Shown: piece after piece, positions 26,901-40,804 of the stretch | Layout: each line of letters starts with the position of its first letter | Position numbering within the stretch: position 1 is the first letter of the stretch | DNA from: Podarcis muralis | Taxonomy: Eukaryota | Direction: 5' to 3' | Assembly (NCBI RefSeq): GCF_964188315.1 | Contig: NC_135658.1 | Location: forward strand, 75,454,001 to 75,518,000 | Length of the DNA: 64,000 bases | Notes under the pieces: model-generated | The model's database searches: none | The model's input: only the letters and a program-made list of their open reading frames with translations | What the model was told of the DNA's origin: nothing | Made by a program: the position numbers and the translations under genes

Positions 26901-27688
26901 CCATACATAGTTTCCCCTCTTGGTATAAAAAAATGAAAATGAAAAACGCATTTATAAGCCCTGCCGCCCGAAACACACACCATTATATCAGAGCTTTCCA
27001 AACTGTGTGTCGCAGCACGTTAGTGTGTCGGCTACAGTGTGTAGGTGTGTTGTGCAAACGCTGTCTGCCTTCCACCCGGGGGATGGAAAGGGGTTGATTT
27101 AACCTTCGGTTTGCTAGTAAAACTGAATTCTGTGTCGTGAAATGATGTGTCTCCAACATGAAAAGTTTGGAACGCTCTGCATTATGTGATACTAGCATGT
27201 GTTAAAATCTACAGTTCACCCTACACTGTGGTCTCACTGTTTGGCAAAGAATTGCCCCCCACCCACCCTTGCCGTGGCTTCAGTGCAACCTATATGTTGC
27301 TTATATGGAGGACTGCAAGCAGTAGAGGGCACCTGCCCACAGACCAGCATATATGAATGGGAGGCATGGAAAGATGACCACATGCCTGCATGCTGACAAA
27401 ACATTCTGACAGCCAGTCGGAATGCAGCGCAGTTGTTCTAGTCAGCAAAGTGATGCTCTTTTGCAAATTCTCACCTTTGAATGACCTTGAGCTGGAGAAG
27501 CTCCTGGTGTGCCGACAAAGTCAAATCTGCACCTCTTATTTTCTGCTGTTCACTTTGTGGCAAAGCTGGAGATTATGCTTCTCAGTGTTATTTCATGAGT
27601 AACACTGCAGTGCATTTAATTTATTTTTCTTTGCGTGTTAAATTTTCAGCCAAGGAATGGAAGGACAGTGGATAATGGAGGTGAATAG
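20613..27688 (+). CDS. NMS: Neuromedin S precursor (~153 aa if dead exon 3 is skipped)
   Basis: AG/GT-bounded, frame-compatible exons: 20613-20685 (MKRHAPPFPLIFVIYCVCTARFTS-G), 21839-21894 (FPQPFDDYLGESDIPKSK), 22882-22941 (ICRSVMDLCNSMFNGMQIDE), 23044-23070 (ENNQEIYKR), 23157-23210 (FLFHYSRAQDPTYPLKTG), 24410-24484 (SFPVHPLMSLAPKLSERRMRRFLDP), 25405-25440 (ESQLAAEEFGKK), 26813-26854 (DSLDTLGRPFFLFR), 27650-27688 (PRNGRTVDNGGE*). Diagnostic FFLFRPRN-G-R core present. The extreme C-terminus is uncertain because of a possible donor at 27681. Confidence 0.95.
22156..22200 (+). pseudogene. NMS: Degenerate (dead) NMS exon 3
   Basis: Intact polypyrimidine tract and AG. Reads RLAWCFCQ*MSEQPH, alignable to human NMS exon 3 (QLAYCLSQWAPLSRQPK). 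TAG at 22180-22182 replaces Trp; donor position reads CAT|gcaaaa. Confidence 0.8.
22437..22615 (+). mobile_element. Degraded L2/CR1-group LINE fragment in NMS intron
   Basis: Decayed match to the LHW..LP..FKVLLL.YKA region also seen at 46617-46859. Confidence 0.55.
23881..23946. repeat. (ATT)n microsatellite, imperfect
   Basis: Directly visible. Confidence 0.95.
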
Positions 27689-27784: not shown

Positions 27785-27912
27785 NNNNNNNNNNNNNNNN
27801 NNNNNNNNNNNNNNNNNNNNNNNNNNNNNNNNNNNNNNNNNNNNNNNNNNNNNNNNNNNNNNNNNNNNNNNNNNNNNNNNNNNNNNNNNNNNNNNNNNNN
27901 NNNNNNNNNNNN
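27785..27912. other. Assembly gap (128 N)
   Basis: Run of n, 97 nt after the provisional NMS stop. Preceded by a (TTTA)n tract and followed by a 10-bp duplication (aatgacatgg x2). Confidence 1.
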
Positions 27913-29540: not shown

Positions 29541-32513
29541 CCCCCAATACCAAGCCTTTCTGGATCAGACCAAAGGCTTGACTAGTCCAGCATTCTCTAT
29601 TCACAGTGGCCAACCAGATGTCCATGGCATGCCTGCAAGGAGGCCGGACTGCAACAGTGTTCTTGCAACCTGCATTGTCCAGCAACTGGTATCTAGAGGC
29701 ATACTGCAGTAGTTATGTGCAGCCATCTTGCAAGAGCATCTTTGCATGGAGGACATCATCTGCATTAGGTGACGGAGAGGGAAGGCTTCAACAGTTGACT
29801 GGAGAGTGCCTTAAGTGCTTAGATTCCTTCAAAGACTGACTGCAGTATTTTTCTTTCAGACTTCAAGGAAAGAGAAAACCCAAGGGTCACTTGGCTTCCT
29901 CGCTCTATCACTTTAAACTCTGAAAAGAAACGTTTGGACTACTAGTCCTTTGTTAAGAGACATGCTCTTGAAGCCTGTGAAGTTACATGTAATAAATTTG
30001 CAGCCATAAATTATACCTGTATGGTTTCTCTGTGTGTTCATGCCCTCCCTTTATACCCCCAATCCCCATATGTACCCAGCTGAATATTCATTTAGGTTTG
30101 CCATGTCCTCATTCAGCAGAAACCCAAATGTGTTCTTTGTTAAAAAGAAATAATTACGATTCAGTGAATAGTTACTCAGATGTGTCTGCTTTATTTGTGG
30201 CATAAGTCACGATAAAGGGACAAGTTGTTGGGATGTGAATAGCTGCTCGGGGAGGATATATTTATTAGATATTATCCTTCCTTCCTTACGTCTGTGAGTT
30301 CAGCAGCTTAAGAGGGAAGCTGTCCCCATCAGTACAACATAGAGGCAGCCATTTTGTTGTGCATGCAATGGCCCTCAGCACATAGAAGCACACATGAAGT
30401 AGCATGGTTCCTGCACCATTTTAAAAAGCACTTTATCAGGCATGGCAGAAGTGCTGTGCTTTCAAGCTGCTCCAGGCCTCAGCTTTAAACTGCTTAAAGC
30501 AGCAGAAGTGGAGATGCAGAACTGCCCTTGGTACAACTCATATGGACTCCTCACTTATTATTTTTTTAATTACTGTTTTTATCTCCAGATTTTTTAAGAT
30601 TTTCCTGGAATCATCCTAAAAATCTCCCTGGGACATGATTTAAGACGTACGTGAACGAAATCAGAACAAGAAGAACTAATATGGATTCTGTCTGCCTCTG
30701 GGATAGATTCTGTCCATCAAGTGATTGACAGATTAATGGCCCCACAAACCTGTCAGAAATGACCCAGAGAGAGTGGGCCAGTTCTGGATTTGGCCCACCA
30801 TTACACAATAATCCAAGAGTAGAGTAGGGTGAACTATTTTGATATAGGTCAAAAAGTCTTTAAAACTGTTCGAAAATTCAAACTTTGAAAGATATCCATC
30901 TATCTGGACACCTAAAAGTAAACACGTGTGGCACATTATTCCTACATAATTGTTTCAGAATTACCCACATTGTAGAACATGGAAGCACTTCCTGCACCAC
31001 AGGAAATGGTAGAAGTGACTATACAATTCTAGAGATTGGAAAGTGTCAGACCCTTGGGTTCCAGAAGGAACATAATAAATATGTTGTTGCACCTCACCAC
31101 AATCTCCAAGCAGTGCAAGATTCCAGGGATTCCAGTTGCTTCCAGGGTTGGGTTTCCTCAGAATGAGGGAGAGAGGAAGCTGATATATGGTTTATTTATA
31201 CACATACATGTATATGAATCTCATTTCTTTTTTTAAAAATTGAGTTTGACTGGATCCAATAATTAGAACAGGGTTCCGGCATATAGCCTATGCCCACCCA
31301 AACTAACAACAGTATTTTCAACACACAGTAGACTTTAGTGGCAGAAGCCTCTTGCACACACGAGGTACGTATTAATTAAAACGACAGCTTTCAGTTCAAC
31401 TTCAACTATGGGCAAATCCTCCTGTTCATTCCTGGGGAAGTGAATCACAGCCCAGTCGCTAAAGGGAACAGAACAGAGGATGACAACACTTTTTTTAAAA
31501 AAGGAGAAACAAAGCTCTCTAATGGTCAAGCCCTGTTCCTTAATTGTCAAAGACTGGTGGAAGCCATCCTGTGGTTTTTCAGTTAACTTGGCGAGCAAAA
31601 CACAATTTCATCTCCATCACGGGGCCACATGAAACTGAACTAGTAATGTATATTAAAACCTTGCAGGAGGTTCCAAAACGCCATCTTGGTTTTATCTCAT
31701 AGGGATCTAAAAGATATTTGAAGTTGTACATTTCAAACTCACATGCAGAAAACCTGAGACGTAAACACTTCGGTATGTTAATTTCAACATATCTTTCTTC
31801 TAATGAAAGCATCTCCCATCAAATTAGAGGGTTGAAGGTACGGGTGGTGAAGCTGCAAACCGAAACATATCACCTCCATCTGCCTCAGCCATTACCGTGC
31901 GAACTGTACGCATTAAGGTTGTGGTCCTAAGTGTGCTTATTTGAAAGCAAATCAACTGCTGTCAGCAAGAACGACTTGCAAGCAAATCTGGCTAGGATTG
32001 CATTCTGCAAGAAGCTGATTCACATTGGCGCACACTCCTAACTGTGATATTACTTGGCTGCTTCCAAAGCTAGCTCAAGACATTTCTGGTAAAATGATTG
32101 GAAAGCTTGTTACAATCAAGCAGCAGATAATTTTGGTCAACTAAAACAAATTTTGAAACCTGAAGTGAAAGACAAGATGCTGCCCGGCCTGCTCCATTCT
32201 ACATACCAAAATCTAGCAGGCTGGCATTTTAATCTTACCTCAGTACTGATGAGATAGTACTGTCCACCTTGCCTGCGGGCAGCCAGCTAGCTTAGGGGGC
32301 ACAGAGCAGGCTGCATGGAAAACACAAACAGCTCTGTACCCCAAGGTGGCTGTCTTTGTCTGATGCTAGGGGCCACCACCTCTAGCTACTCCACCATTAT
32401 CAAGCATATCTGGGGCTTATTAGATAATAGAGCACACAATACCTGCTGGATGAGATCAGTCACAGCCCAAGGTCATTACAAGAATTGCGCTACTGCAGGG
32501 TCAAGAATGTTGA

Positions 32514-32873
32514 GGGACGCGGGTGGCGCTGTGGGTAAAACCTCAGTGCCTAGGACTTGCCGATCGCATGGTCGGCGGTTCGAATCCCCGCGGCGGGGTG
32601 CACTCCCGTCGTTCGGTCCCAGCGCCTACCAACCTAGCAGTTCAAAAGCACCTCCGGGTGCAAGTAGATAAATAGGGACCGCTTACCAGCGGGAAGGTAA
32701 ACGGCGTTCCGTGTGCTGCGCTGGCTCGCCAGATGCAGCTTGTCACGCTGGCCACGTGACCCGGAAGTGTCTGCGGACAGCGCTGGCTCCCGGCCTATAG
32801 AGTGAGATGAGCGCACAACCCTAGAGTCTGGCAAGACTGGCCCGTACGGGCAGGGGTACCTTTACCTTTACCT
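32514..32873 (+). mobile_element. Sauria SINE, full length
   Basis: Complete head to (ACCTTT)n tail; 11-bp TSD agggtcaagaa (32497-32507 / 32874-32884). Confidence 0.93.
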
Positions 32874-33108
32874 AGGGTCAAGAAGGTGGTGAAGCAAGCA
32901 ATCAAGCTGGCCAAGTTCATAGGTCAGTGGCTGGGAACCCAGAGGTCTTAAAAATAACAGCTCAATTGCGTCACAAAACAACTTGTGTGGATCTGTAATG
33001 GAAGGTCATACAAGTAGGAAATGTATTATAGCTAGTTCACAGGTCATTAGACACAACCGGTAAGGCTAATTAAAAGCATACATTTCTCTGTACATTATAG
33101 AATTTGCC

Positions 33109-33167
33109 TTTATTTTATTTTAACATTTAAAACATTTTAACATTATTTTAACATTTTAACATTTATT
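33109..33167 (-). terminator. Poly(A) signals of H2A copy A
   Basis: AATAAA on the minus strand at 33162-33167, 33114-33119 and 33109-33114. No histone stem-loop seen after the stop. Confidence 0.6.
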
Positions 33168-33313
33168 TAAACATCTAAAGTTTTTGTTTTTGTTTTGTTT
33201 TTTACAACAGACCATACTAATGATGAATGCCCCAAAGAACAAAAGCTAAGCTTCTGACAATATAACCTTTCTGGCAGAGTCTGTTCTTGCAAGATACTGA
33301 AATGCTGAAAGTT

Positions 33314-33727
33314 TTATAATTCCTGGGATTCGGGGTGTCCTGTGGCTTCCTTACGCTGCAGAGTCTTCTTGGGAATAAGCTGGGTATGGATGTTGGGGAG
33401 AACTCCACCTTCCGCAATGGTCACATGTGCAAACAGCTTGTTCAACTCATCATCGCTTCTGATCGCCAACTGGATGTGGCGTGGCCCAATTCGTTGCTTC
33501 TTGTTCTCATGAGCAGCATTTCCCGCCAGCTCCAGTAGCTCTGCAGTCAGATATTCCAACACGGCAGCCATGTACACCAAGGCGCCAACACCCACTCTTT
33601 CTGCGTACCGACCCCGTCTCAAAAGACGTCCGATGCGGCCCACTGGGAACTGCAAGCCAGCTCTTGCACTTTTGCTTTTTTTTACCTTGATTGCAGGCTT
33701 TGCCGGCTTCTTGCCCCGCCCAGACAT
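33314..33727 (-). CDS. Divergent histone H2A variant, copy A (137 aa, C-terminal SQEL)
   Basis: Intact [68 protein letters not shown]. Polypyrimidine acceptor tgtag|GATCCAAGATG just upstream (exon starts 33735). Confidence 0.93.
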
Positions 33728-35034
33728 CTTGGATCCTACAAACAAGAGAGGAGAGCCCAACTCCACTACACAATGCAAATGGCTTTGTGAGGTGTCCAAA
33801 GCCTAGTTGACCTTCCTGCAATTTGGAAGGAAGAGTATTTGGAGAACCAAACGCCTAAGAATTTTCTGTAATAATGACCTAGGATGTGGCCTTAAGATTT
33901 ACATTCTTCTAAGCAGACTGGTTTTCTGCCAAATCAAGTTCAGCCATTTTAGGACCAGGTCAGCCAAAGAGGAGCTCTACACCAGTTGCTGGACTCCAAT
34001 TCCCATCAGCCATAGCAACTACGATCCAGGCTGAAGGATTGTAGGCCAACATCATCTGCATACCATCCAACATTTCTCCGATGAACATAAGGACGTCTCA
34101 TTCCATAATGATGATTTTACTATTTATACTCCATGCTTCTAATAGATATAAAAAATATAATAAAACCTTAAACAACCTTCCCTATACAGGATTAACTTCA
34201 GATGGCTTGGGGGTTGGATAGCTCAGTACCTTCCAACATTTCTCCAATTAAAATAGGGACATCCTAAGGAAAAATGGGACATTCCAGGATTAAGTAAGAA
34301 ACTGGGATGCTTTTCTAAATCGGGAACGTCCCTGGAACACAATAGAAACACAATAGAAATAGAAGGCCTGCATCCAAAAGGGCACCATGTTTGCTAACCC
34401 TGTTTAAAACAATGCTACCACCCCATAGTAAGGTAGAAAGCTAGGAAGAAGGAATTTTTGCCACTGATAGCACAAAGTTTGTTCAGTCAGTAGCAAAAAG
34501 TGCTAGGACAAAAAGCTGCTGGAGAATTCTGCTTCATCAAAAAAAGATGTCAGTGTCATATACCCACTTAGTAATTCTTTTAAAAATTATATAATTTTTA
34601 TTCTCTAAAATACAGCTACATGGTGTTAAGTCAATGCAGGAGCTATGCCTCTTTAGTAGGAATGCTATTGTACACGTCCAATGGTGGCTTGCTCCTCAGA
34701 CCTTAGAAGGCCTTATGTCTCACCATACAGATAAAAATTTCATCTGCTATATTTCTTAAAAAACATGATTAGCCTACCATTAAAGGCTAAACAGGGTTTC
34801 CCACCCCCCTAAAAAGCTTTTAAAAATTAAAAAAGGAAAGGAAAATCTAACAGCAATCAGTAGTACACATAATATACGTGTGCTAATATACGGTATATTA
34901 TTAAGCATAATGTATTTATTATTCATAACATATTATCTTTAAACATAACATAGGTAATACTTATATGTATTACTCTTATATTAGAAACTAATTAAACCAC
35001 TTGCATTTTTTTTCATTTCAAAAAAGCCACTCAC

Positions 35035-35170
35035 CTTCTTATTACAGCAGACAACTACAAAGACAAGAGTTTTCTCCTCCTTTGACATAACCCTCTTTTT
35101 AAACCAATTTGTTCAGAACAGCTGCATCCAATTTGTCAGTATTTCTGATTTTAATGGATACCAATCCTTT
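35035..35170 (-). promoter_or_regulatory. Promoter and non-coding exon 1 of H2A copy A
   Basis: Donor AAG|gtgagtgg (exon end 35035), TTTAAAA box 35097-35103, CAGCTG 35119-35124. Alignable to the copy B promoter at 38250-38480. Confidence 0.7.
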
Positions 35171-35790
35171 TAATTTAAAGAAGTCCCATTCTGATCAATA
35201 GGGTTTGAGAGGGTATTTTACCACAATTATGACACTTTCAGAAAGCTAATTTTAATTCTCAAGGGAAGTAATAGAACCGTTCTATTCTGCCTTGGTTAGA
35301 CCACATTCAATATGTTTTCCACCTACCAAGGAAACTTTCCACTGAGAGATGGAAATAGAGATATGGATAACAGCTGAGTTTTATATGTTAAACAATGGAG
35401 GATAAACTATGGTATGTTTATTTTACCCCTGCAGTCCCAATGACAACCTGAAACCTGCACAGAACCTGGTGGAGCCTACAGTAATTTGAACATCTGCTAT
35501 CTCCTCTCATGGCCCGTTTTAAGATTATGGGCTCCTCCATACTTATATTGAGCATTTATTATGATTGGTTTTAATGTTATGACAGCCATATCATATCAAA
35601 GCAGAGCAAACAGAAATGGACCTTGGTTTTAGAAGTTATCTTAAGAGCACTACACACTTTCTCTCTTTCAAGTATCGCCCACCCAGACTTTTTGGGGTCT
35701 CTTTTTGTCTCTCCTCAACTGTAGCAAGCTGATTAGCAATTTCATTTCAGCTCAAGTTACCTCAGTAACTTGAGCCAATCTCCCTCCCTA

Positions 35791-36031
35791 AAAGGTAAAG
35801 GGACCCCTGATCATTAGGTCCAGTCGTGGCCGACTCTGGGGTTGCGGCGCTCATCTCGCTTTATTGGCCAGGGGAGCCAGCGTACAGCTTCCAGGTCATG
35901 TGGCCAGCATGACTAAGCCGCTTCTGGCGAACCAGAGCAGCGCACGGAAACGCTGTTTACCTTCCCATCGGAGCGGTACCTATTTATCTCTGGTTTGCCA
36001 GAAGCGGCTTAGTCATGCTGGCCACATGACC
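35791..36031 (-). mobile_element. 5'-truncated Sauria SINE ending in an inverted duplication
   Basis: SINE 3' half to 35988, then 35988-36031 is the reverse complement of 35894-35937. Confidence 0.85.
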
Positions 36032-36537
36032 CATATGTGTAAGAGATTCAGGAACTAAAGTATTTACCATCACAAAAGAATGGCCCAGGTTGAGCAATGA
36101 TTGAACATTACTGGGTAGCCTGACAGACAGGTTTTCTGCTGTAGACCGTCCCCCTGTGATGTATGTATGATGTTTTAGGAGGTGGTCTTGAGCTACAGGG
36201 AAGGCAATTCCAAAAGTCTATATAAGAGCTTGCACACCATTGTTCAGGGTTCCTCTCCTCCCTCCCTGCGTGGGGGGAGTGGGGGACCCTGTTGCAACAG
36301 TTTAATAAAGATCATGCTTACTAGCTGCTTTGCTTCTCAATATTCTCTGGCTGGCCTCTGTTATTTTCTCCTACCAATAGAAAACCTACATAAGGACTCT
36401 ATATGGGCTCTTTGATACCCCATAAGGGAAAAGGGGCAGTTTTTTCTTATAACAGGGTTGTTACCGGTATCTGGTGCTTGCTTTCAAATGATGCATCAGT
36501 AGGTAGCAACAAAGCGCAGAGTGGAAGCTTGTGTATC

Positions 36538-36580
<43 letters not shown>

Positions 36581-36640
36581 TGCATTATTTATACCCTGCC
36601 CGTCTGGCTGGGTTTCCCCAGCCACTCTGGGCGGCTCCTG
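36538..36640 (-). mobile_element. (AAT)n tract plus L2-type LINE 3' end
   Basis: (AAT)n followed by tttataccctgcccgtctggctgggtttccccagccactctgggcggc; similar motif at ~44745-44782. Confidence 0.55.
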
Positions 36641-38249
36641 ACAGAGGACTAAAAACAGAATAAAACTTCAAACATTAAAAACTTCTCTAAAAATAGATTA
36701 CAGCAAAAGTGACAAAAAATCTCGTGGCACTTGGAAGGCCTCAGTAAATCTGTTAGTCTTTTAATAGTGCCACAAAGTTTGGTTTAGCCACTGATACAAT
36801 GCAGCAGAAGCAGCTGACTTGTAAGCTTGTGCCATAATGGTGAGGTATGTCCTACCGTGGAAGGACGTCTGGATCCAGAATTGGCCTCCACAGTCACACA
36901 CACACACACACACACACACACGGTTAAGACCATATTCATGGAAGACAATCTTACTCAGCTATGAGTGATCACCAAAGAAGAAGACAATGTCAATGGTGAA
37001 GGCTTTAAAGTGCCACAAAACTCCCAGAAGCTTTCCCTAAGTAAAACCAGCCCTCCCATTGGGTAGAGTGAGGCTATGGCCTCAGGCAGTTCATTTTGGG
37101 GGTGTAATAAAATGGCAGCAAATGGTAATGTATTCAGTATGCTAAATAGCAGGACCAAATAAAGTGATGTAGAAGTGTGGCAGCTGGTATTTTAGTTCTC
37201 TATATCTCTTCAGGTTCGGGGGAGAGTACAAAAAAAAGTTGTAACCGTGAGATGAGCTTGTTGACATCAGCCTATTATTTTTTTAATCCCCATTTACCTC
37301 ATCCCCTGCTTTGTGCAACATTGTGTATGAAGAAAAAGTGCAAATAATTAAATGATATTAATCTTGTATTTTTATATTATTGTAACTCTCCTTGGAAACA
37401 TACAGTAAAGTTTGGAACAAAGAAATAAATGAAGAGCTATGAGATCAGCTTATAGACATCAGCCTAATTTATGTACTGTACTTTTGTTTTGTTTTGTTTT
37501 GTTTTTACCTTCTTCCTTCTATCCACTTGCTTTGTGGAACATCTTCCCAGATGAAGAGTTCTGGAGAAAAATAGTTGCCACTCTTCTGTGACATTTTGGT
37601 TGGTGCCAGTAAAGGTAGTGCCCAATGGTGGATTTTGGAATGGTCCTGACCACATTTGTTAAAAGCCTAAATCCTGAGAGTAAGCCTCATTTAAATCAAT
37701 GGGGCTTGGTAGTAAATAAGGCAAGGGAAAGTAAAAAACAAACAAGCCACACGCCCAACTGGCTGAGTCTGCATTTAGTCACAAGGTGCTTCCAAATTAT
37801 AGGAGGCATTCAAGCGCATAACAGAAATTTAGGTTTGTGCAATTTAAGTGGATTAAAATACCCTGCTGCCATAACACAACATATCCCCTCATGGACTTTT
37901 TGCACTTTGTAAAGTGACAGGAAATGAATTGAAAAGTGTGAGAGGAATGAGTAATTAACAAGACATGTAAACACACAAGTAAATCAGGAGGAATAGTTTA
38001 TCCTCCATTTATTTAAAGATATGAAAAGGTGGCTCTTAGCCATGTTTGTTTCCATCTTTAAGTAAAAACCAAAGTTTCCTTGGTAGCTAGAAAATATATT
38101 TAGTGTTAATCATGCTATACCCTCCTTCAGAATTGAAATTTGCTTTCTGAAAGTGTGATCATCATTCTATTGAACAACCTACTGATCACAAGGGAACTTC
38201 TCTAAAGTGAGAGAATTGAGTTCTGCCACCAAAATAGCCAAGTTGAAAC

Positions 38250-38430
38250 CAATTCAGTCAGAACTACTGGGAAAGTGGATACAGCTGAGGGAACTTTCAT
38301 TCAAACACAGCTGATCAAATTCCCACATTAGCATCAACAGAGGAGTTTAAAATGAGAGCCATGTTCAAAAAGGAGAAAATTCTTTCGTTGACTGGAGACG
38401 AGTCATAACTCAAGTGTTTCACTGAAGGAG
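38250..38430 (+). promoter_or_regulatory. Promoter and non-coding exon 1 of H2A copy B
   Basis: CAGCTG at 38282 and 38308, TTTAAAA 38346-38352, donor GAG|gtgagtgg at 38431. Homologous to the copy A promoter. Confidence 0.7.
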
Positions 38431-38665
38431 GTGAGTGGTTTTATTTTTAAAAACATGCTAGTGGTTTAATTATAAGGTAAGATTAATAATAAATATTAGG
38501 TTTAAAGAGCTAGCTATGTATGCTGCTGAGGGCTACTGGAATTCCATCCCTCCCTTGACTTGCATAAGCCTTTTAGAAAAATGTGATGTATAAAGCCAAA
38601 AATGCTCATATTGGCCTGCCAACAGTAGATTAATCAGTAGTATGAGTTTTAGAAATCCAGTAGAT

Positions 38666-38801
38666 CAGACATCCCCAACCTGCGGCCCTCCAGATGTTTT
38701 GGCTTACAACTCCCATGATCCCTAGCTAGCAAGACCAGTGGCCAGGGATGATGGGAATTGTAGTCCAAAACATCTGGAGGGCCGAAGGTTGGGGATTCCT
38801 G
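38666..38801. mobile_element. Palindromic hAT MITE in H2A copy B intron
   Basis: Near-complete self-complementarity; exact 8-bp TSD cagtagat (38658-38665 / 38802-38809). Confidence 0.88.
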
Positions 38802-39019
38802 CAGTAGATGAAGCTTTTCATCGAATGGTGAGCCATTAGGGTCTCTAATGCCTTGAGAACAAGCCACATGATAATATTCCTAATAGGGTGGCATGGCTCC
38901 TGCATTGGTTTAACACCATGTAGCTGTGTGTTATCAGGGGCAAAACTCTTCGATTTCCCTAGCTTTCTATCACTTACCATGGAGTAGTGGGATTGTTTTG
39001 AAAACAGGGATAGCCCAAC

Positions 39020-39187
39020 CAGTGGCGTAGCGTGGGTTGTCAGCACCCGGGGCAAGGCAAGTAATTTGCGCCCCCAACCTGTGGATTTGCGCCCCCTAAC
39101 CCGTGGATTTGTGCCCCCTAACCCTAACCCCCAGATGTTGCGCCCGGTGTGGCCGGCCCCCCCTGCACCCCCCACGCTACGCCACTG
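39020..39187. mobile_element. hAT MITE in H2A copy B intron
   Basis: 17-bp perfect TIR cagtggcgtagcgtggg; exact 8-bp TSD agcccaac (39012-39019 / 39188-39195); internal ~21-bp tandem repeats. Confidence 0.9.
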
Positions 39188-39508
39188 AGCCCAACTGGTG
39201 CCCTTTGGATGTTTTCGGCCTGCAGCCCACTTCATCCTTCAGCCTGGGTCATAGTTGCTGTGGCTGATGGGAATTGGAGTCCAGCAACTGCTGTGGGGCT
39301 TTCCTTTGGCTGACCTGATTCTAACATGACTGAACTAGCAGAAAATTGGTCTGTTTATCTTAAGGCCACATTCTAGGTCCTTATTACAGCAAATTCTTAG
39401 GCGCTTGGTTCTCTGATTACTCTTCCTTCCATATTGTTAGCAATATGACAAAACCATTTGCCTTGTGTAATGAAGGTGGGCTCTCCTCTCTTACTTGTAG
39501 GATCCAGG

Positions 39509-39904
39509 ATGTCTGGGCGTGGCAAGAAGCCTGCAAAGCCTGCAACCAAGGAACAAAAAAACAAGAGTGCAAGAGCTGGCTTGCAGTTCCCAGTGGGCCG
39601 CATTGGACGTCTTTTGAGACGGGGTCGGTACGCAGAAAGAGTGGGTGTTGGCGCCTCGGTGTACTTGGCTGCCGTGTTGGAATATCTGACTGCAGAGCTA
39701 CTGGAGCTGGCGGGAAATGCTGCTCATGAGAACAAGAGGCAACGAATTGGGCCACGCCACATCCAGTTGGCGATCAGAAGCGATGATGAGTTGAACAAGC
39801 TGTTTGCACATGTGACCATTGCGGAAGGTGGAGTTCTCCCCCACATCAATGCTTTGCTTCTTCCAAAGAAAACAGCACCGTCCACTGTTCCCCAGGAGGA
39901 ATGA
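39509..39904 (+). CDS. Divergent histone H2A variant, copy B (131 aa, C-terminal PQEE)
   Basis: Intact ORF with the same histone fold as copy A; acceptor ttacttgtag|GATCCAGGATG (exon starts 39501). Confidence 0.93.
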
Positions 39905-40007
39905 AGGGGACCTGACCTCATGTGACATTTCTGTCTCTTACTGTCTGAAAAAGCTCCTTGTCCTTTTCATGTAGCACTTTCACTAGGAAGAACTCTATAT
40001 TTGTGTG

Positions 40008-40035
40008 TTTTAATAATATTTTTTGTAATAATAAA
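40008..40035 (+). terminator. CPE-like element and poly(A) signal of H2A copy B
   Basis: TTTTAAT 40008-40014, AATAAA 40030-40035; no stem-loop after the stop. Confidence 0.65.
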
Positions 40036-40574
40036 TTGTGCAATATAAAGCTTGGGCATGGTTTCTTTGTGAGCAAAGAACGGATTCAAAACTTTTTTAA
40101 AAATAAAAACTGGGATGGGAGCTTGTTGTGCAACTAGAGGCCTTTTGCAGGCCCGATGGTATGGTATGTGGAATGAAGCTGTACTCTTCACCGATTATTC
40201 AAGGCCTGCTAGTGGAATTAGATGACCATAATCGGGCTACATGATGTTGGGAATAAACTCAGGTTATGGTGTATTGTCATCTTAATGAACTTTCCTGGGA
40301 GGACATTAGCTACAAGCTTGCGACAACTGCCTCTGAACAGCAAGTGATTTGTTTCCACATACCTAAGGTGTCCAAATGCTGTGCGATGATGTGCATTCAG
40401 TGCTTGTTGCTGGCACCATTTTGGTCACCCCCATGTTCACCCTTTCCCACACTGTTAATTTAACATGCATTCTGACAAGAGTGCACTACGAGAACAGGAT
40501 GCTGGTTAGATGAACCTTAGATCTGACCCAGCAGGGCACACTGAAATATCCTGCACCTTTGTGCCCCTGTACTG

Positions 40575-40724
40575 AAAGCGGTACCTATTTATCTACTTGC
40601 ACTTTGACGTGCTTTCGAACTGCTCCGAGCAACAGGAGCTCCCATCACGGGGATTTGAACTGCCGACCTTCTGATTGGCAAGTCCTAGGCTCTGTGGTTT
40701 AACCCACAGCGCCACCCTCGTCCC
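40575..40724 (-). mobile_element. Sauria SINE, 5' portion only
   Basis: Head and first half of the SINE with internal deletions. Confidence 0.8.
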
Positions 40725-40804
40725 TACAGAGAAATATTTGAGCTGAATTTGGGAGAGTCAAAATGGCTTCACGATTGCTCTCCTGTACTGTTTCAGACAC
40801 TATA

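What the first reader, a model, noticed from the sequence alone, without database searches (positions are those of the whole stretch)
33109..40035. Inverted pair of divergent, spliced, polyadenylated histone H2A variant genes between NMS and PDCL3
Seen: two intact H2A ORFs (137 and 131 aa) point outward ~5.8 kb apart. There is no H2B or other histone nearby and no stem-loop. Each has an acceptor 8 nt before the ATG, a homologous upstream donor and promoter, and AATAAA. The sequence fits none of canonical H2A, H2A.Z, macroH2A or standard H2A.X. Established: in human, NMS and PDCL3 are neighbours with no histone gene, and replication-independent variants are poly(A)+ and often spliced. Inference: a lineage-restricted, probably germ-line or maternal, two-gene H2A variant system. 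Some features (MSGRGKK start, TIxEGG) recall what I remember of fish oocyte-specific H2af1o-type proteins, which needs testing.
Basis: partly seen in the sequence, partly recalled or inferred. Interest (0 to 1): 0.88.

Follow-up and report, generated by a model that had tools for sequence, protein, structure and literature searches.

The report
Lizard egg-type histone H2A gene pair
Two intact, transcribed and spliced histone H2A genes in a wall lizard belong to the known vertebrate egg-type H2A family (frog H2A.X-F, fish H2af1o), so they are unstudied members of a known kind, not a lizard invention.

Summary
Two intact H2A ORFs (137 and 131 aa) lie head to head, 5,782 nt from ATG to ATG. There is no other core histone in the window and no histone 3' stem-loop. 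Each gene has AATAAA signals, a TATA-like box, a short 5' exon and an acceptor 8 nt before the ATG. RNA contigs show the exact GT..AG splice of gene B and use of gene A's acceptor.

The "lineage-restricted" reading fails. Both proteins fall in a well-supported vertebrate clade (100/99) with fish h2af1al (= H2af1o), frog H2A.X-F-type proteins, salamanders and all sauropsid groups. The family marks are MSGRGKK, Phe98, HIQLA, TIAEGG and a terminal SQEF.

Sauropsids keep two paralogues. The A-type ends in SQEF (SQEL in Podarcis). The B-type has lost the terminal motif (PQEE here). The rhea has the same order, A, B, PDCL3, but in tandem; lacertids have B inverted. Frog and fish members lie at other loci.

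Both genes are under purifying selection (dN/dS 0.32 and 0.18 against Lacerta). Their histone folds were homogenised by recent gene conversion (272/276 nt identical) while the tails stay distinct. Egg or germ-line expression is inferred from the frog and fish relatives and was not tested here. This scan had not reported the family on other DNA.

The parts
33314..33727 (-). Gene A coding sequence (137 aa, A-type, ends SQEL), stop codon included
   Evidence: 99% identical to the Podarcis raffonei protein and 90% to the Lacerta agilis protein, both annotated 'histone H2A, sperm-like'
33109..33735 (-). Gene A exon 2. It starts at the acceptor 8 nt before the ATG. The 3' end is inferred from AATAAA at 33167-33162 and 33119-33109.
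   Evidence: contigs of X1 and X2 leave the genome at 33735; 3' end not observed
33736..35034 (-). Gene A 5'-UTR intron (1,299 nt, GT..AG), predicted
   Evidence: acceptor use supported; the donor is inferred from homology with B and with Lacerta
35035..35075 (-). Gene A exon 1 (non-coding). Its start is inferred at about 25-30 nt after the TATA-like box.
   Evidence: 95% identical to Lacerta
35097..35103 (-). Gene A TATA-like box TTTAAAA, conserved in A and B of both Podarcis and Lacerta
35232..35264 (-). Upstream block conserved in all four lacertid promoters (…GAATTAAAATTAGCTTTCTGAAAGTGT), a candidate regulatory element
38124..38156 (+). Gene B copy of the same conserved upstream block
38346..38352 (+). 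Gene B TATA-like box TTTAAAA
   Evidence: the RNA contigs start 27-31 nt downstream
38373..38430 (+). Gene B exon 1 (non-coding)
   Evidence: contigs of X3 and X4 begin at 38373 and 38377 and join 38430 to 39501
38431..39500 (+). Gene B 5'-UTR intron (1,070 nt, GT..AG). It holds interspersed repeats and a palindromic mir-5408-like repeat.
39501..40035 (+). Gene B exon 2, drawn up to the first AATAAA (40030-40035). The true 3' end was not observed.
39509..39904 (+). Gene B coding sequence (131 aa, B-type, ends PQEE), stop codon included
   Evidence: 93% identical to Lacerta agilis B
33395..33670 (-). Gene-conversion tract, A side (codons 20-111, the histone fold and docking domain)
   Evidence: 272/276 nt identical to 39566-39841, dS 0.014, against dS 0.16-0.19 between Podarcis and Lacerta orthologues
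39566..39841 (+). Gene-conversion tract, B side

Best explanation
These are the two sauropsid members of the vertebrate egg-type H2A family, known as H2A.X-F in Xenopus and H2af1o/h2af1al in fish.

Gene structure. Each gene is a replication-independent unit: a TATA-like promoter, a roughly 40-60 nt non-coding exon 1, a 1.1-1.3 kb intron, and an exon 2 that carries the whole ORF. There is no histone stem-loop. AATAAA signals are present.

The proteins. Both keep a full H2A fold, the acidic patch and the LPKK site of K118/K119. They also carry the family's docking-domain changes: Phe98, HIQLA and TIAEGG.

The two paralogues. Gene A keeps a terminal SQ-E-hydrophobic motif (SQEL) that PIKK-type kinases can phosphorylate. 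Gene B has lost it (PQEE). The duplication most likely predates the split of lizards and birds. Repeated gene conversion homogenises promoter, intron end and fold, while the tails stay distinct. Lacertids inverted gene B.

Inferred function. By homology, the proteins are made in germ cells and stored in the egg, and they replace canonical H2A in chromatin of the early embryo.

Shown: gene structure, transcription, the splice, clade membership, purifying selection, gene conversion, and the shared position next to PDCL3 in a bird. Inferred: polyadenylation, tissue of expression, phosphorylation and chromatin effect.
For: Structure and RNA.

Family:
- Named homologues were found across sauropsids, amphibians and fish.
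- Tails and signature residues were read.
- In the careful ML tree the variant clade separates from the canonical H2A outgroup (plus two invertebrate SQ-tailed H2As) at 100/99. The sauropsid clade has 100/98.
- The frog member aligns end to end with PDB 7KBD chain C (E 1.9e-72). That model was built for Xenopus egg nucleosomes, and its authors identify Phe98 of H2A.X-F1/F2, the predominant egg H2A, in the density.
- h2af1al is the gene of Wu et al. 2009 (h2af1o) and is ovary- and oocyte-specific and maternal in Carassius (PMC9439954).
- H2A.X-F makes up more than half of egg H2A in Xenopus (PMC4191874).
- Chordate H2A.X-F forms its own clade, apart from H2A.X-Y (PMC12153100).

Pair and synteny: tandem B-then-A pairs in Chelonia, Chordeiles, Alligator, Rhea and Gekko. 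Rhea has PDCL3 directly next to B. Lacerta has the same inverted layout as the window.

Selection and conversion: one search gives dN/dS 0.32 for A and 0.18 for B. The core dS between A and B is 0.014, against 0.16-0.19 between orthologues. One search gives 98.6% identity in the core, 55% in the tail and no homology in the 3' UTR.
Against: - Tissue of expression is unknown because samples are coded. Depth is low (3-5), and one ordinary RNA-seq run showed no reads.
- By raw score, lizard A is as close to human canonical H2A (179 bits) as to Xenopus H2A.X-F (174 bits). Membership therefore rests on the tree and on shared derived residues.
- No vertebrate H2A.X-Y sequence was in my tree.
- Frog (Spea), bowfin and stickleback members lie at other loci. 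Orthology outside sauropsids is therefore phylogenetic only.
- A and B cluster by lineage in the tree. That pattern is also what independent duplications would give.
- The low dN/dS of B's core could be partly maintained by conversion from A.
Confidence: 0.8

Rival explanations
1. A lineage-restricted (squamate or lacertid) new H2A variant system.
For: The head-to-head layout is seen only in the two lacertids examined. Some substitutions (R71H, H31G) and the SQEL end are lacertid- or Podarcis-specific.
Against: Homologues with the same signature residues and the same two tail types occur in turtles, crocodilians, birds and other squamates. A B-like tail is present in tuatara. SQEF-type proteins occur in amphibians and fish. 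The clade has 100/99 support. Rhea shares the position next to PDCL3.
Confidence: 0.03
2. The A/B pairs arose by independent duplications in each sauropsid lineage, not by one old duplication followed by gene conversion.
For: In the protein tree, A and B group by lineage: birds 100/98, lacertids 99/95, and also Hemicordylus and Rhineura.
Against: - Every lineage has one SQEF-ending copy and one copy with an internal or degenerate SQE tail.
- The order A, B, PDCL3 is shared by rhea and lacertids.
- In Podarcis the tails are saturated (dS about 1.1) and the 3' UTRs are unalignable, while the core is 98.6% identical. That is the signature of conversion.
- The AU test does not reject a single A-type clade (p 0.129).
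Confidence: 0.15
3. The genes are male-germ-line (sperm or testis) H2As rather than maternal egg H2As, or the two copies are split between the sexes.
For: - Automatic names say 'sperm-like'.
- Transcripts annotated under the same automatic name as clade members (late histone H2A.2.2) accumulate in ejaculated seabream sperm, and in salmon are listed as gonad-specific in both sexes.
- In Podarcis, A contigs were found in samples S1 and S2 and B contigs in sample S3.
Against: The names come only from similarity to sea-urchin histones. The characterised members are egg- and oocyte-enriched and maternal: Xenopus H2A.X-F, and zebrafish and gibel carp H2af1o/h2af1al.
Confidence: 0.2
4. Gene B of Podarcis is decaying. 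It has lost the SQ serine and is seven residues shorter than Lacerta B, and it looks conserved only because conversion from A keeps repairing its core.
For: B ends PQEE* where Lacerta has PQEELRGPDLM. Tail dN/dS is about 0.6. The core was recently converted.
Against: The ORF is intact, and the gene is transcribed and correctly spliced. B-type genes persist in all sauropsid groups examined. Core dN/dS against Lacerta B is 0.05.
Confidence: 0.08

Closest known systems
Xenopus laevis H2A.X-F (H2A.X-F1/F2, also written H2A.X.3; modelled in PDB 7KBD/7KBE/7KBF)
   Same: The same clade through frog relatives. Shared marks: MSGRGKK start, Phe98, HIQLA, an acidic residue in TIA[E/D]GG, and a terminal SQE-hydrophobic motif in the A-type. 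Both are full-length H2As with the acidic patch kept.
   Different: Lizard A ends SQEL, not SQEF. Lizards carry a second paralogue (B) without the terminal motif. The one frog locus examined (Spea) lies between a CN-hydrolase gene and a TPR gene, not next to PDCL3. Egg storage, S1 phosphorylation, R3 methylation and SQEF phosphorylation are shown only in Xenopus (PMC4191874).
Fish H2af1o / h2af1al (gibel carp and zebrafish oocyte H2A; Wu et al. 2009, Yue et al. 2013, PMC9439954)
   Same: The same vertebrate clade and signature residues. Most fish members end in SQEF.
   Different: The genomic neighbours differ: CREG-like and SET-domain genes in bowfin, an LRR gene in stickleback. Copy number varies, up to 11 extra copies in gibel carp. 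Oocyte specificity and the need for cleavage synchrony are shown only in fish.
Canonical replication-dependent H2A
   Same: About 70-75% identity. The fold, the acidic patch and the K118/K119 site are the same.
   Different: No stem-loop, one intron, a solitary locus away from other histones, AATAAA signals, and a distinct N-tail, docking domain and C-tail.
H2A.X (SQEY type)
   Same: Gene A has a C-terminal SQ-E-hydrophobic motif. Yeast H2A.X likewise ends SQEL (PMC3380720).
   Different: No terminal tyrosine. A published tree puts chordate H2A.X-F and H2A.X-Y in separate clades (PMC12153100). I did not test this with vertebrate H2A.X-Y sequences.

Membership tests
H2A.X-F / H2af1o (h2af1al) egg-type H2A | Full H2A histone fold plus the H2A C-terminal docking domain | tested here: met
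   Pfam Histone and Histone_H2A_C in both proteins
H2A.X-F / H2af1o (h2af1al) egg-type H2A | Falls in the clade holding fish h2af1al and frog H2A.X-F-type proteins, apart from canonical H2A | tested here: met
   Variant clade 99 (quick tree) and 100/99 (careful tree), 79 variant rows against 7 outgroup rows. No vertebrate H2A.X-Y was in the set.
H2A.X-F / H2af1o (h2af1al) egg-type H2A | Signature residues: MSGRGKK start, Phe98 (…NKLF…), HIQLA, and an acidic residue in TIA[E/D]GG | tested here: met
   Present in both A and B. The same residues are in the 7KBD_C alignment. Phe98 is named as the identifier of H2A.X-F.
H2A.X-F / H2af1o (h2af1al) egg-type H2A | C-terminal SQ[E/D]F | tested here: inconclusive
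   A ends SQEL: SQ and a hydrophobic last residue are kept, with F changed to L (also in P. raffonei). Lacerta A ends SQEF. B ends PQEE, so B does not meet this feature.
H2A.X-F / H2af1o (h2af1al) egg-type H2A | Maternal, oocyte or egg-enriched expression | not testable with these tools
   Transcripts are present in four RNA libraries, but tissues are coded
H2A.X-F / H2af1o (h2af1al) egg-type H2A | Shared genomic position with the frog and fish members | tested here: not met
   Spea: CN_hydrolase and TPR neighbours. Bowfin: CREG-like and SET-domain neighbours. Stickleback: an LRR gene. The position next to PDCL3 is shared with rhea and Lacerta.
Canonical replication-dependent H2A | Histone 3' stem-loop, no intron, and a place in a histone gene cluster | tested here: not met
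   No RF00032 match even at E<=10. A spliced 5' UTR. No other histone in the 64 kb.
Short H2A variants (H2A.B/L/P/Q) | Truncated docking domain and C-tail, with a reduced acidic patch | tested here: not met
   Full-length docking domain, acidic-patch residues and LPKK kept
H2A.X (SQEY type) | C-terminal SQ[E/D]Y | tested here: not met
   A ends SQEL and B ends PQEE

The most novel reading that the evidence does not exclude
Sauropsids may have kept, for more than 250 million years, a two-gene egg or germ-line H2A module next to PDCL3. One partner can be phosphorylated at a terminal SQE-hydrophobic motif. The other has that motif buried or destroyed. Gene conversion keeps their histone folds identical while selection keeps the tails apart. 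The two copies would then be used in different samples or sexes, as hinted by A-only and B-only contigs in different Podarcis libraries. On this reading the B-type is an undescribed H2A subtype with a function of its own.
Probability: 0.3. Interest if true: 0.55.

Novelty: new member of a known kind. Interest (0 to 1): 0.35.

Why it matters
H2A.X-F and H2af1o have been studied only in animals whose eggs develop externally and fast (frog, zebrafish, carp), and they were proposed to be an adaptation to that. Intact, expressed and constrained copies in lizards, turtles, crocodilians and birds show that amniotes with large yolky eggs kept the family, so its role is probably more general.

The sauropsid pair offers a natural contrast between a tail that can be phosphorylated and one that cannot. 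It is also a clean case of gene conversion confined to the histone fold. For genome annotation, names such as "histone H2A, sperm-like" are misleading for these genes.

Tried and rejected
- Rfam search for a histone stem-loop, at gathering score and at E<=10: nothing.
- Search for the NMU/NMS C-terminal motif, to confirm the left neighbour: only an FQPRNGR stretch at 27644, next to an N run. NMS remains unconfirmed.
- Synteny from 10-kb flanks in Chelonia, Chordeiles, Alligator and Gekko: no neighbouring genes within reach. Only Rhea and Lacerta reached PDCL3.
- Raw-read RNA run X13: no reads on gene B.
- Gene A's exon 1 to exon 2 junction was not seen directly. Contigs stop at the acceptor with 4-12 unplaced letters.
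- AU test of a single A-type clade: not rejected, so it does not decide between an old duplication and repeated ones.
- Literature searches for the automatic names and for lizard or ovary found no study of the sauropsid genes. The supplement tables of PMC12153100 are not held.
- My global MAFFT alignment of the two units mis-registered exon 1. The four-way local alignment was used instead.
- I did not run structure prediction, because solved structures of close relatives exist.


Full report
**1. What is there**

The window comes from a Podarcis wall-lizard chromosome (GCA_964188315.1, OZ076957.1). It holds two intact H2A ORFs.
- Gene A is 33727..33314 on the minus strand: 137 aa, ending ESQEL.
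- Gene B is 39509..39904 on the plus strand: 131 aa, ending VPQEE.

They are head to head, 5,782 nt from ATG to ATG. Both match Pfam Histone and Histone_H2A_C. tblastn and hallmark-motif scans find no further H2A and no H2B, H3, H4 or H1 in the 64 kb. No Rfam histone 3' stem-loop is found at gathering score in the whole window, nor at E<=10 in 32800-40500.

**2. Gene structure and RNA**

Both ORFs are preceded by ...tgtag|GATCCARG, so the acceptor is 8 nt before the ATG. Further upstream each gene has a GTGAGT donor: the intron starts at 35034 in A and at 38431 in B. Each also has a TTTAAAA box (A 35103-35097, B 38346-38352) and a 33-nt upstream block. All of these are conserved among A and B of both Podarcis and Lacerta agilis.

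Contigs of RNA libraries X3 and X4 (one sample) start at 38373 and 38377 and join 38430 to 39501. That skips 1,070 nt with GT..AG ends, which is exactly the predicted intron of B. The contig starts are 27-31 nt after the TATA-like box.

Contigs of X1 and X2 (two other samples) carry gene A's diagnostic bases and leave the genome at 33735, A's acceptor, with 4-12 further letters too short to place. Unique intron sequence has zero depth, so these are spliced RNAs and not contaminating DNA.

Depth is low (about 3-5). No contig covers either 3' UTR. Polyadenylation therefore rests on AATAAA at 33167-33162 and 33119-33109 (A) and at 40030-40035 (B).

**3. Neighbours**

To the right of B, on the same strand, is a phosducin-family gene (242 aa). 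Its exons at about 43.7, 47.5 and 48.8 kb match the phosducin-family (PDCL3) gene next to the rhea genes. To the left of A is a 169-aa gene with no Pfam hit. I could not confirm that it is NMS.

**4. Family**

A search of the large protein collection returns close homologues in these groups:
- Squamates, annotated "histone H2A, sperm-like" and "late histone H2A.2.2-like".
- Tuatara, turtles, crocodilians and birds.
- Salamanders.
- Herring, anchovy, bichir and sturgeon.

A second search, starting from the herring protein, adds many teleosts named "H2A histone family member 1a like" (h2af1al), plus bowfin and many frogs.

These proteins share MSGRGKK, HIQLA...NKLF... (Phe98) and TI[A/S][E/D]GG. 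Most end in SQEF. Canonical H2A has MSGRGKQ, HLQLA, KLL and TIAQGG.

In a maximum-likelihood tree of 86 sequences, the 79 variant proteins separate from the seven outgroup rows (five canonical H2As and two invertebrate SQ-tailed H2As). Support is 99 in the quick tree and 100/99 in the careful tree. Sauropsids form a clade at 100/98.

The link to known proteins rests on two points.
- The frog (Spea) member aligns end to end with PDB 7KBD chain C (E 1.9e-72). That chain is the H2A of Xenopus egg-extract nucleosomes. Its authors identify Phe98 of H2A.X-F1/F2, the predominant egg H2A, in the density.
- h2af1al is the gene described as H2af1o by Wu et al. 2009. It is ovary- and oocyte-specific and maternal in gibel carp, and it is needed for cleavage synchrony in zebrafish.

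A published survey finds chordate H2A.X-F and H2A.X-Y in separate clades, and finds H2A.X-F also in non-aquatic species (PMC12153100).

One caveat: by raw score, lizard A is as near to human canonical H2A as to Xenopus H2A.X-F. Membership rests on the tree and on the shared derived residues.

**5. The pair is old and the layout is young**

Every sauropsid group examined has two types.
- The A-type ends in SQEF. It is SQEL in the window species and in P. raffonei.
- The B-type carries an internal or degenerate SQE followed by a few residues. Examples: turtles ...ASQEESSNY, birds ...SQEQGGSQ, Lacerta ...PQEELRGPDLM, the window ...PQEE.

B then A lie in tandem, 4-8 kb apart, in green turtle, nighthawk, Chinese alligator, rhea and a gecko. 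In rhea, PDCL3 lies directly beside B. The order A, B, PDCL3 is thus shared with the window, but B is inverted in Podarcis and in Lacerta.

Outside sauropsids the position differs.
- Spea: between a CN-hydrolase gene and a TPR gene.
- Bowfin: between a CREG-like gene and a SET-domain gene.
- Stickleback: next to an LRR gene.

**6. Selection and concerted evolution**

Against Lacerta, dN/dS is 0.32 for A (core 0.19) and 0.18 for B (core 0.05). The tails run at about 0.6-0.7.

Within Podarcis, A and B compare as follows:

| Segment | A versus B |
|---|---|
| Codons 20-111 (core) | 4 differences in 276 nt (dS 0.014) |
| C-tails | 55% identical (dS about 1.1) |
| 3' UTRs | unalignable |
| Last 270 nt of the intron | 85% identical |
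| 5' UTR plus N-tail | 88% identical |

For comparison, the orthologue dS between Podarcis and Lacerta is 0.16-0.19.

The fold was therefore converted after the Podarcis-Lacerta split, and a wider tract was converted earlier. This explains why A and B group by lineage in the tree (lacertids 99/95, birds 100/98). The AU test does not reject a single A-type clade (p 0.129). I favour one old duplication with recurrent conversion over repeated duplication.

**7. How it most likely works**

Shown: two TATA-driven, spliced, stem-loop-less H2A genes that are transcribed and constrained. They encode full-length H2As with the acidic patch and K118/K119 intact and with the family's docking-domain substitutions.

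Inferred from the frog and fish members: expression in germ cells, storage in the egg, and bulk replacement of canonical H2A in cleavage-stage chromatin, with higher nucleosome mobility. Gene A keeps a terminal SQ-E-hydrophobic motif, and yeast H2A.X also ends SQEL. It could therefore be phosphorylated as Xenopus H2A.X-F is in eggs without DNA damage. Gene B cannot.

A contigs occurred in samples S1 and S2, and B contigs in sample S3. This hints at different use of the two genes, but the tissues are unknown. Fish papers list transcripts annotated under the same automatic name as clade members (late histone H2A.2.2) as gonad-specific in both sexes and as abundant in sperm. A male-germ-line role therefore cannot be excluded.

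**8. Verdict**

The interpretation as a lineage-restricted novelty is wrong. These are unstudied sauropsid members of a described vertebrate family, automatically annotated under misleading names.

What is modestly new:
- the conserved two-paralogue arrangement in sauropsids;
- its position next to PDCL3;
- the lacertid inversion of B;
- gene conversion limited to the fold.

No paper on the sauropsid genes was found in the held library.

Noticed in passing
window 38692-38775 (within the palindrome 38666-38801): A palindromic repeat in gene B's intron matches Rfam mir-5408 on both strands at about 50 bits, below the gathering score of 90. It is most likely an interspersed hairpin repeat, not a curated miRNA locus.
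   Followed up: no
window 27644 (+), next to the N run 27785-27912: This is the only NMU/NMS-like amidation motif in the window. It reads FQPRNGR, not FRPRNGR, unless a splice site intervenes. The left neighbour's identity as NMS is therefore unconfirmed.
   Followed up: partly
window 32701-32968, 35783-36050, 38577-39246, 40453-40700: Interspersed repeats have very high summed depth in all RNA libraries. Inverted copies flank the gene pair (32513-32684 against 40576-40725). Whether they played a part in the inversion of gene B is unknown.
   Followed up: no
L007:2622-2987 (-), Chelonia mydas: A third, uncalled H2A-like ORF match (65% identity to gene A) lies about 7 kb upstream of the turtle B-type gene, on the opposite strand.
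   Followed up: no
L010:2083-2445 (+), Gekko japonicus: An uncalled second H2A copy (58.5% identity) lies about 7.5 kb upstream of the gecko A-type gene on the same strand. It suggests a tandem layout in a gecko, in contrast to lacertids.
   Followed up: partly
L012, Amia ocellicauda: The bowfin h2af1al gene sits next to a CREG-like gene. From memory, human CREG2 lies on 2q11.2 not far from PDCL3, which could hint at an old linkage. Not tested.
   Followed up: no
P0204 (Carassius gibelio), P0011 (Zootoca vivipara isoform X2): Some family members have replaced or truncated tails. One gibel carp copy lacks SQEF, and a Zootoca isoform ends early. Tail turnover is therefore not confined to the sauropsid B-type.
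   Followed up: no
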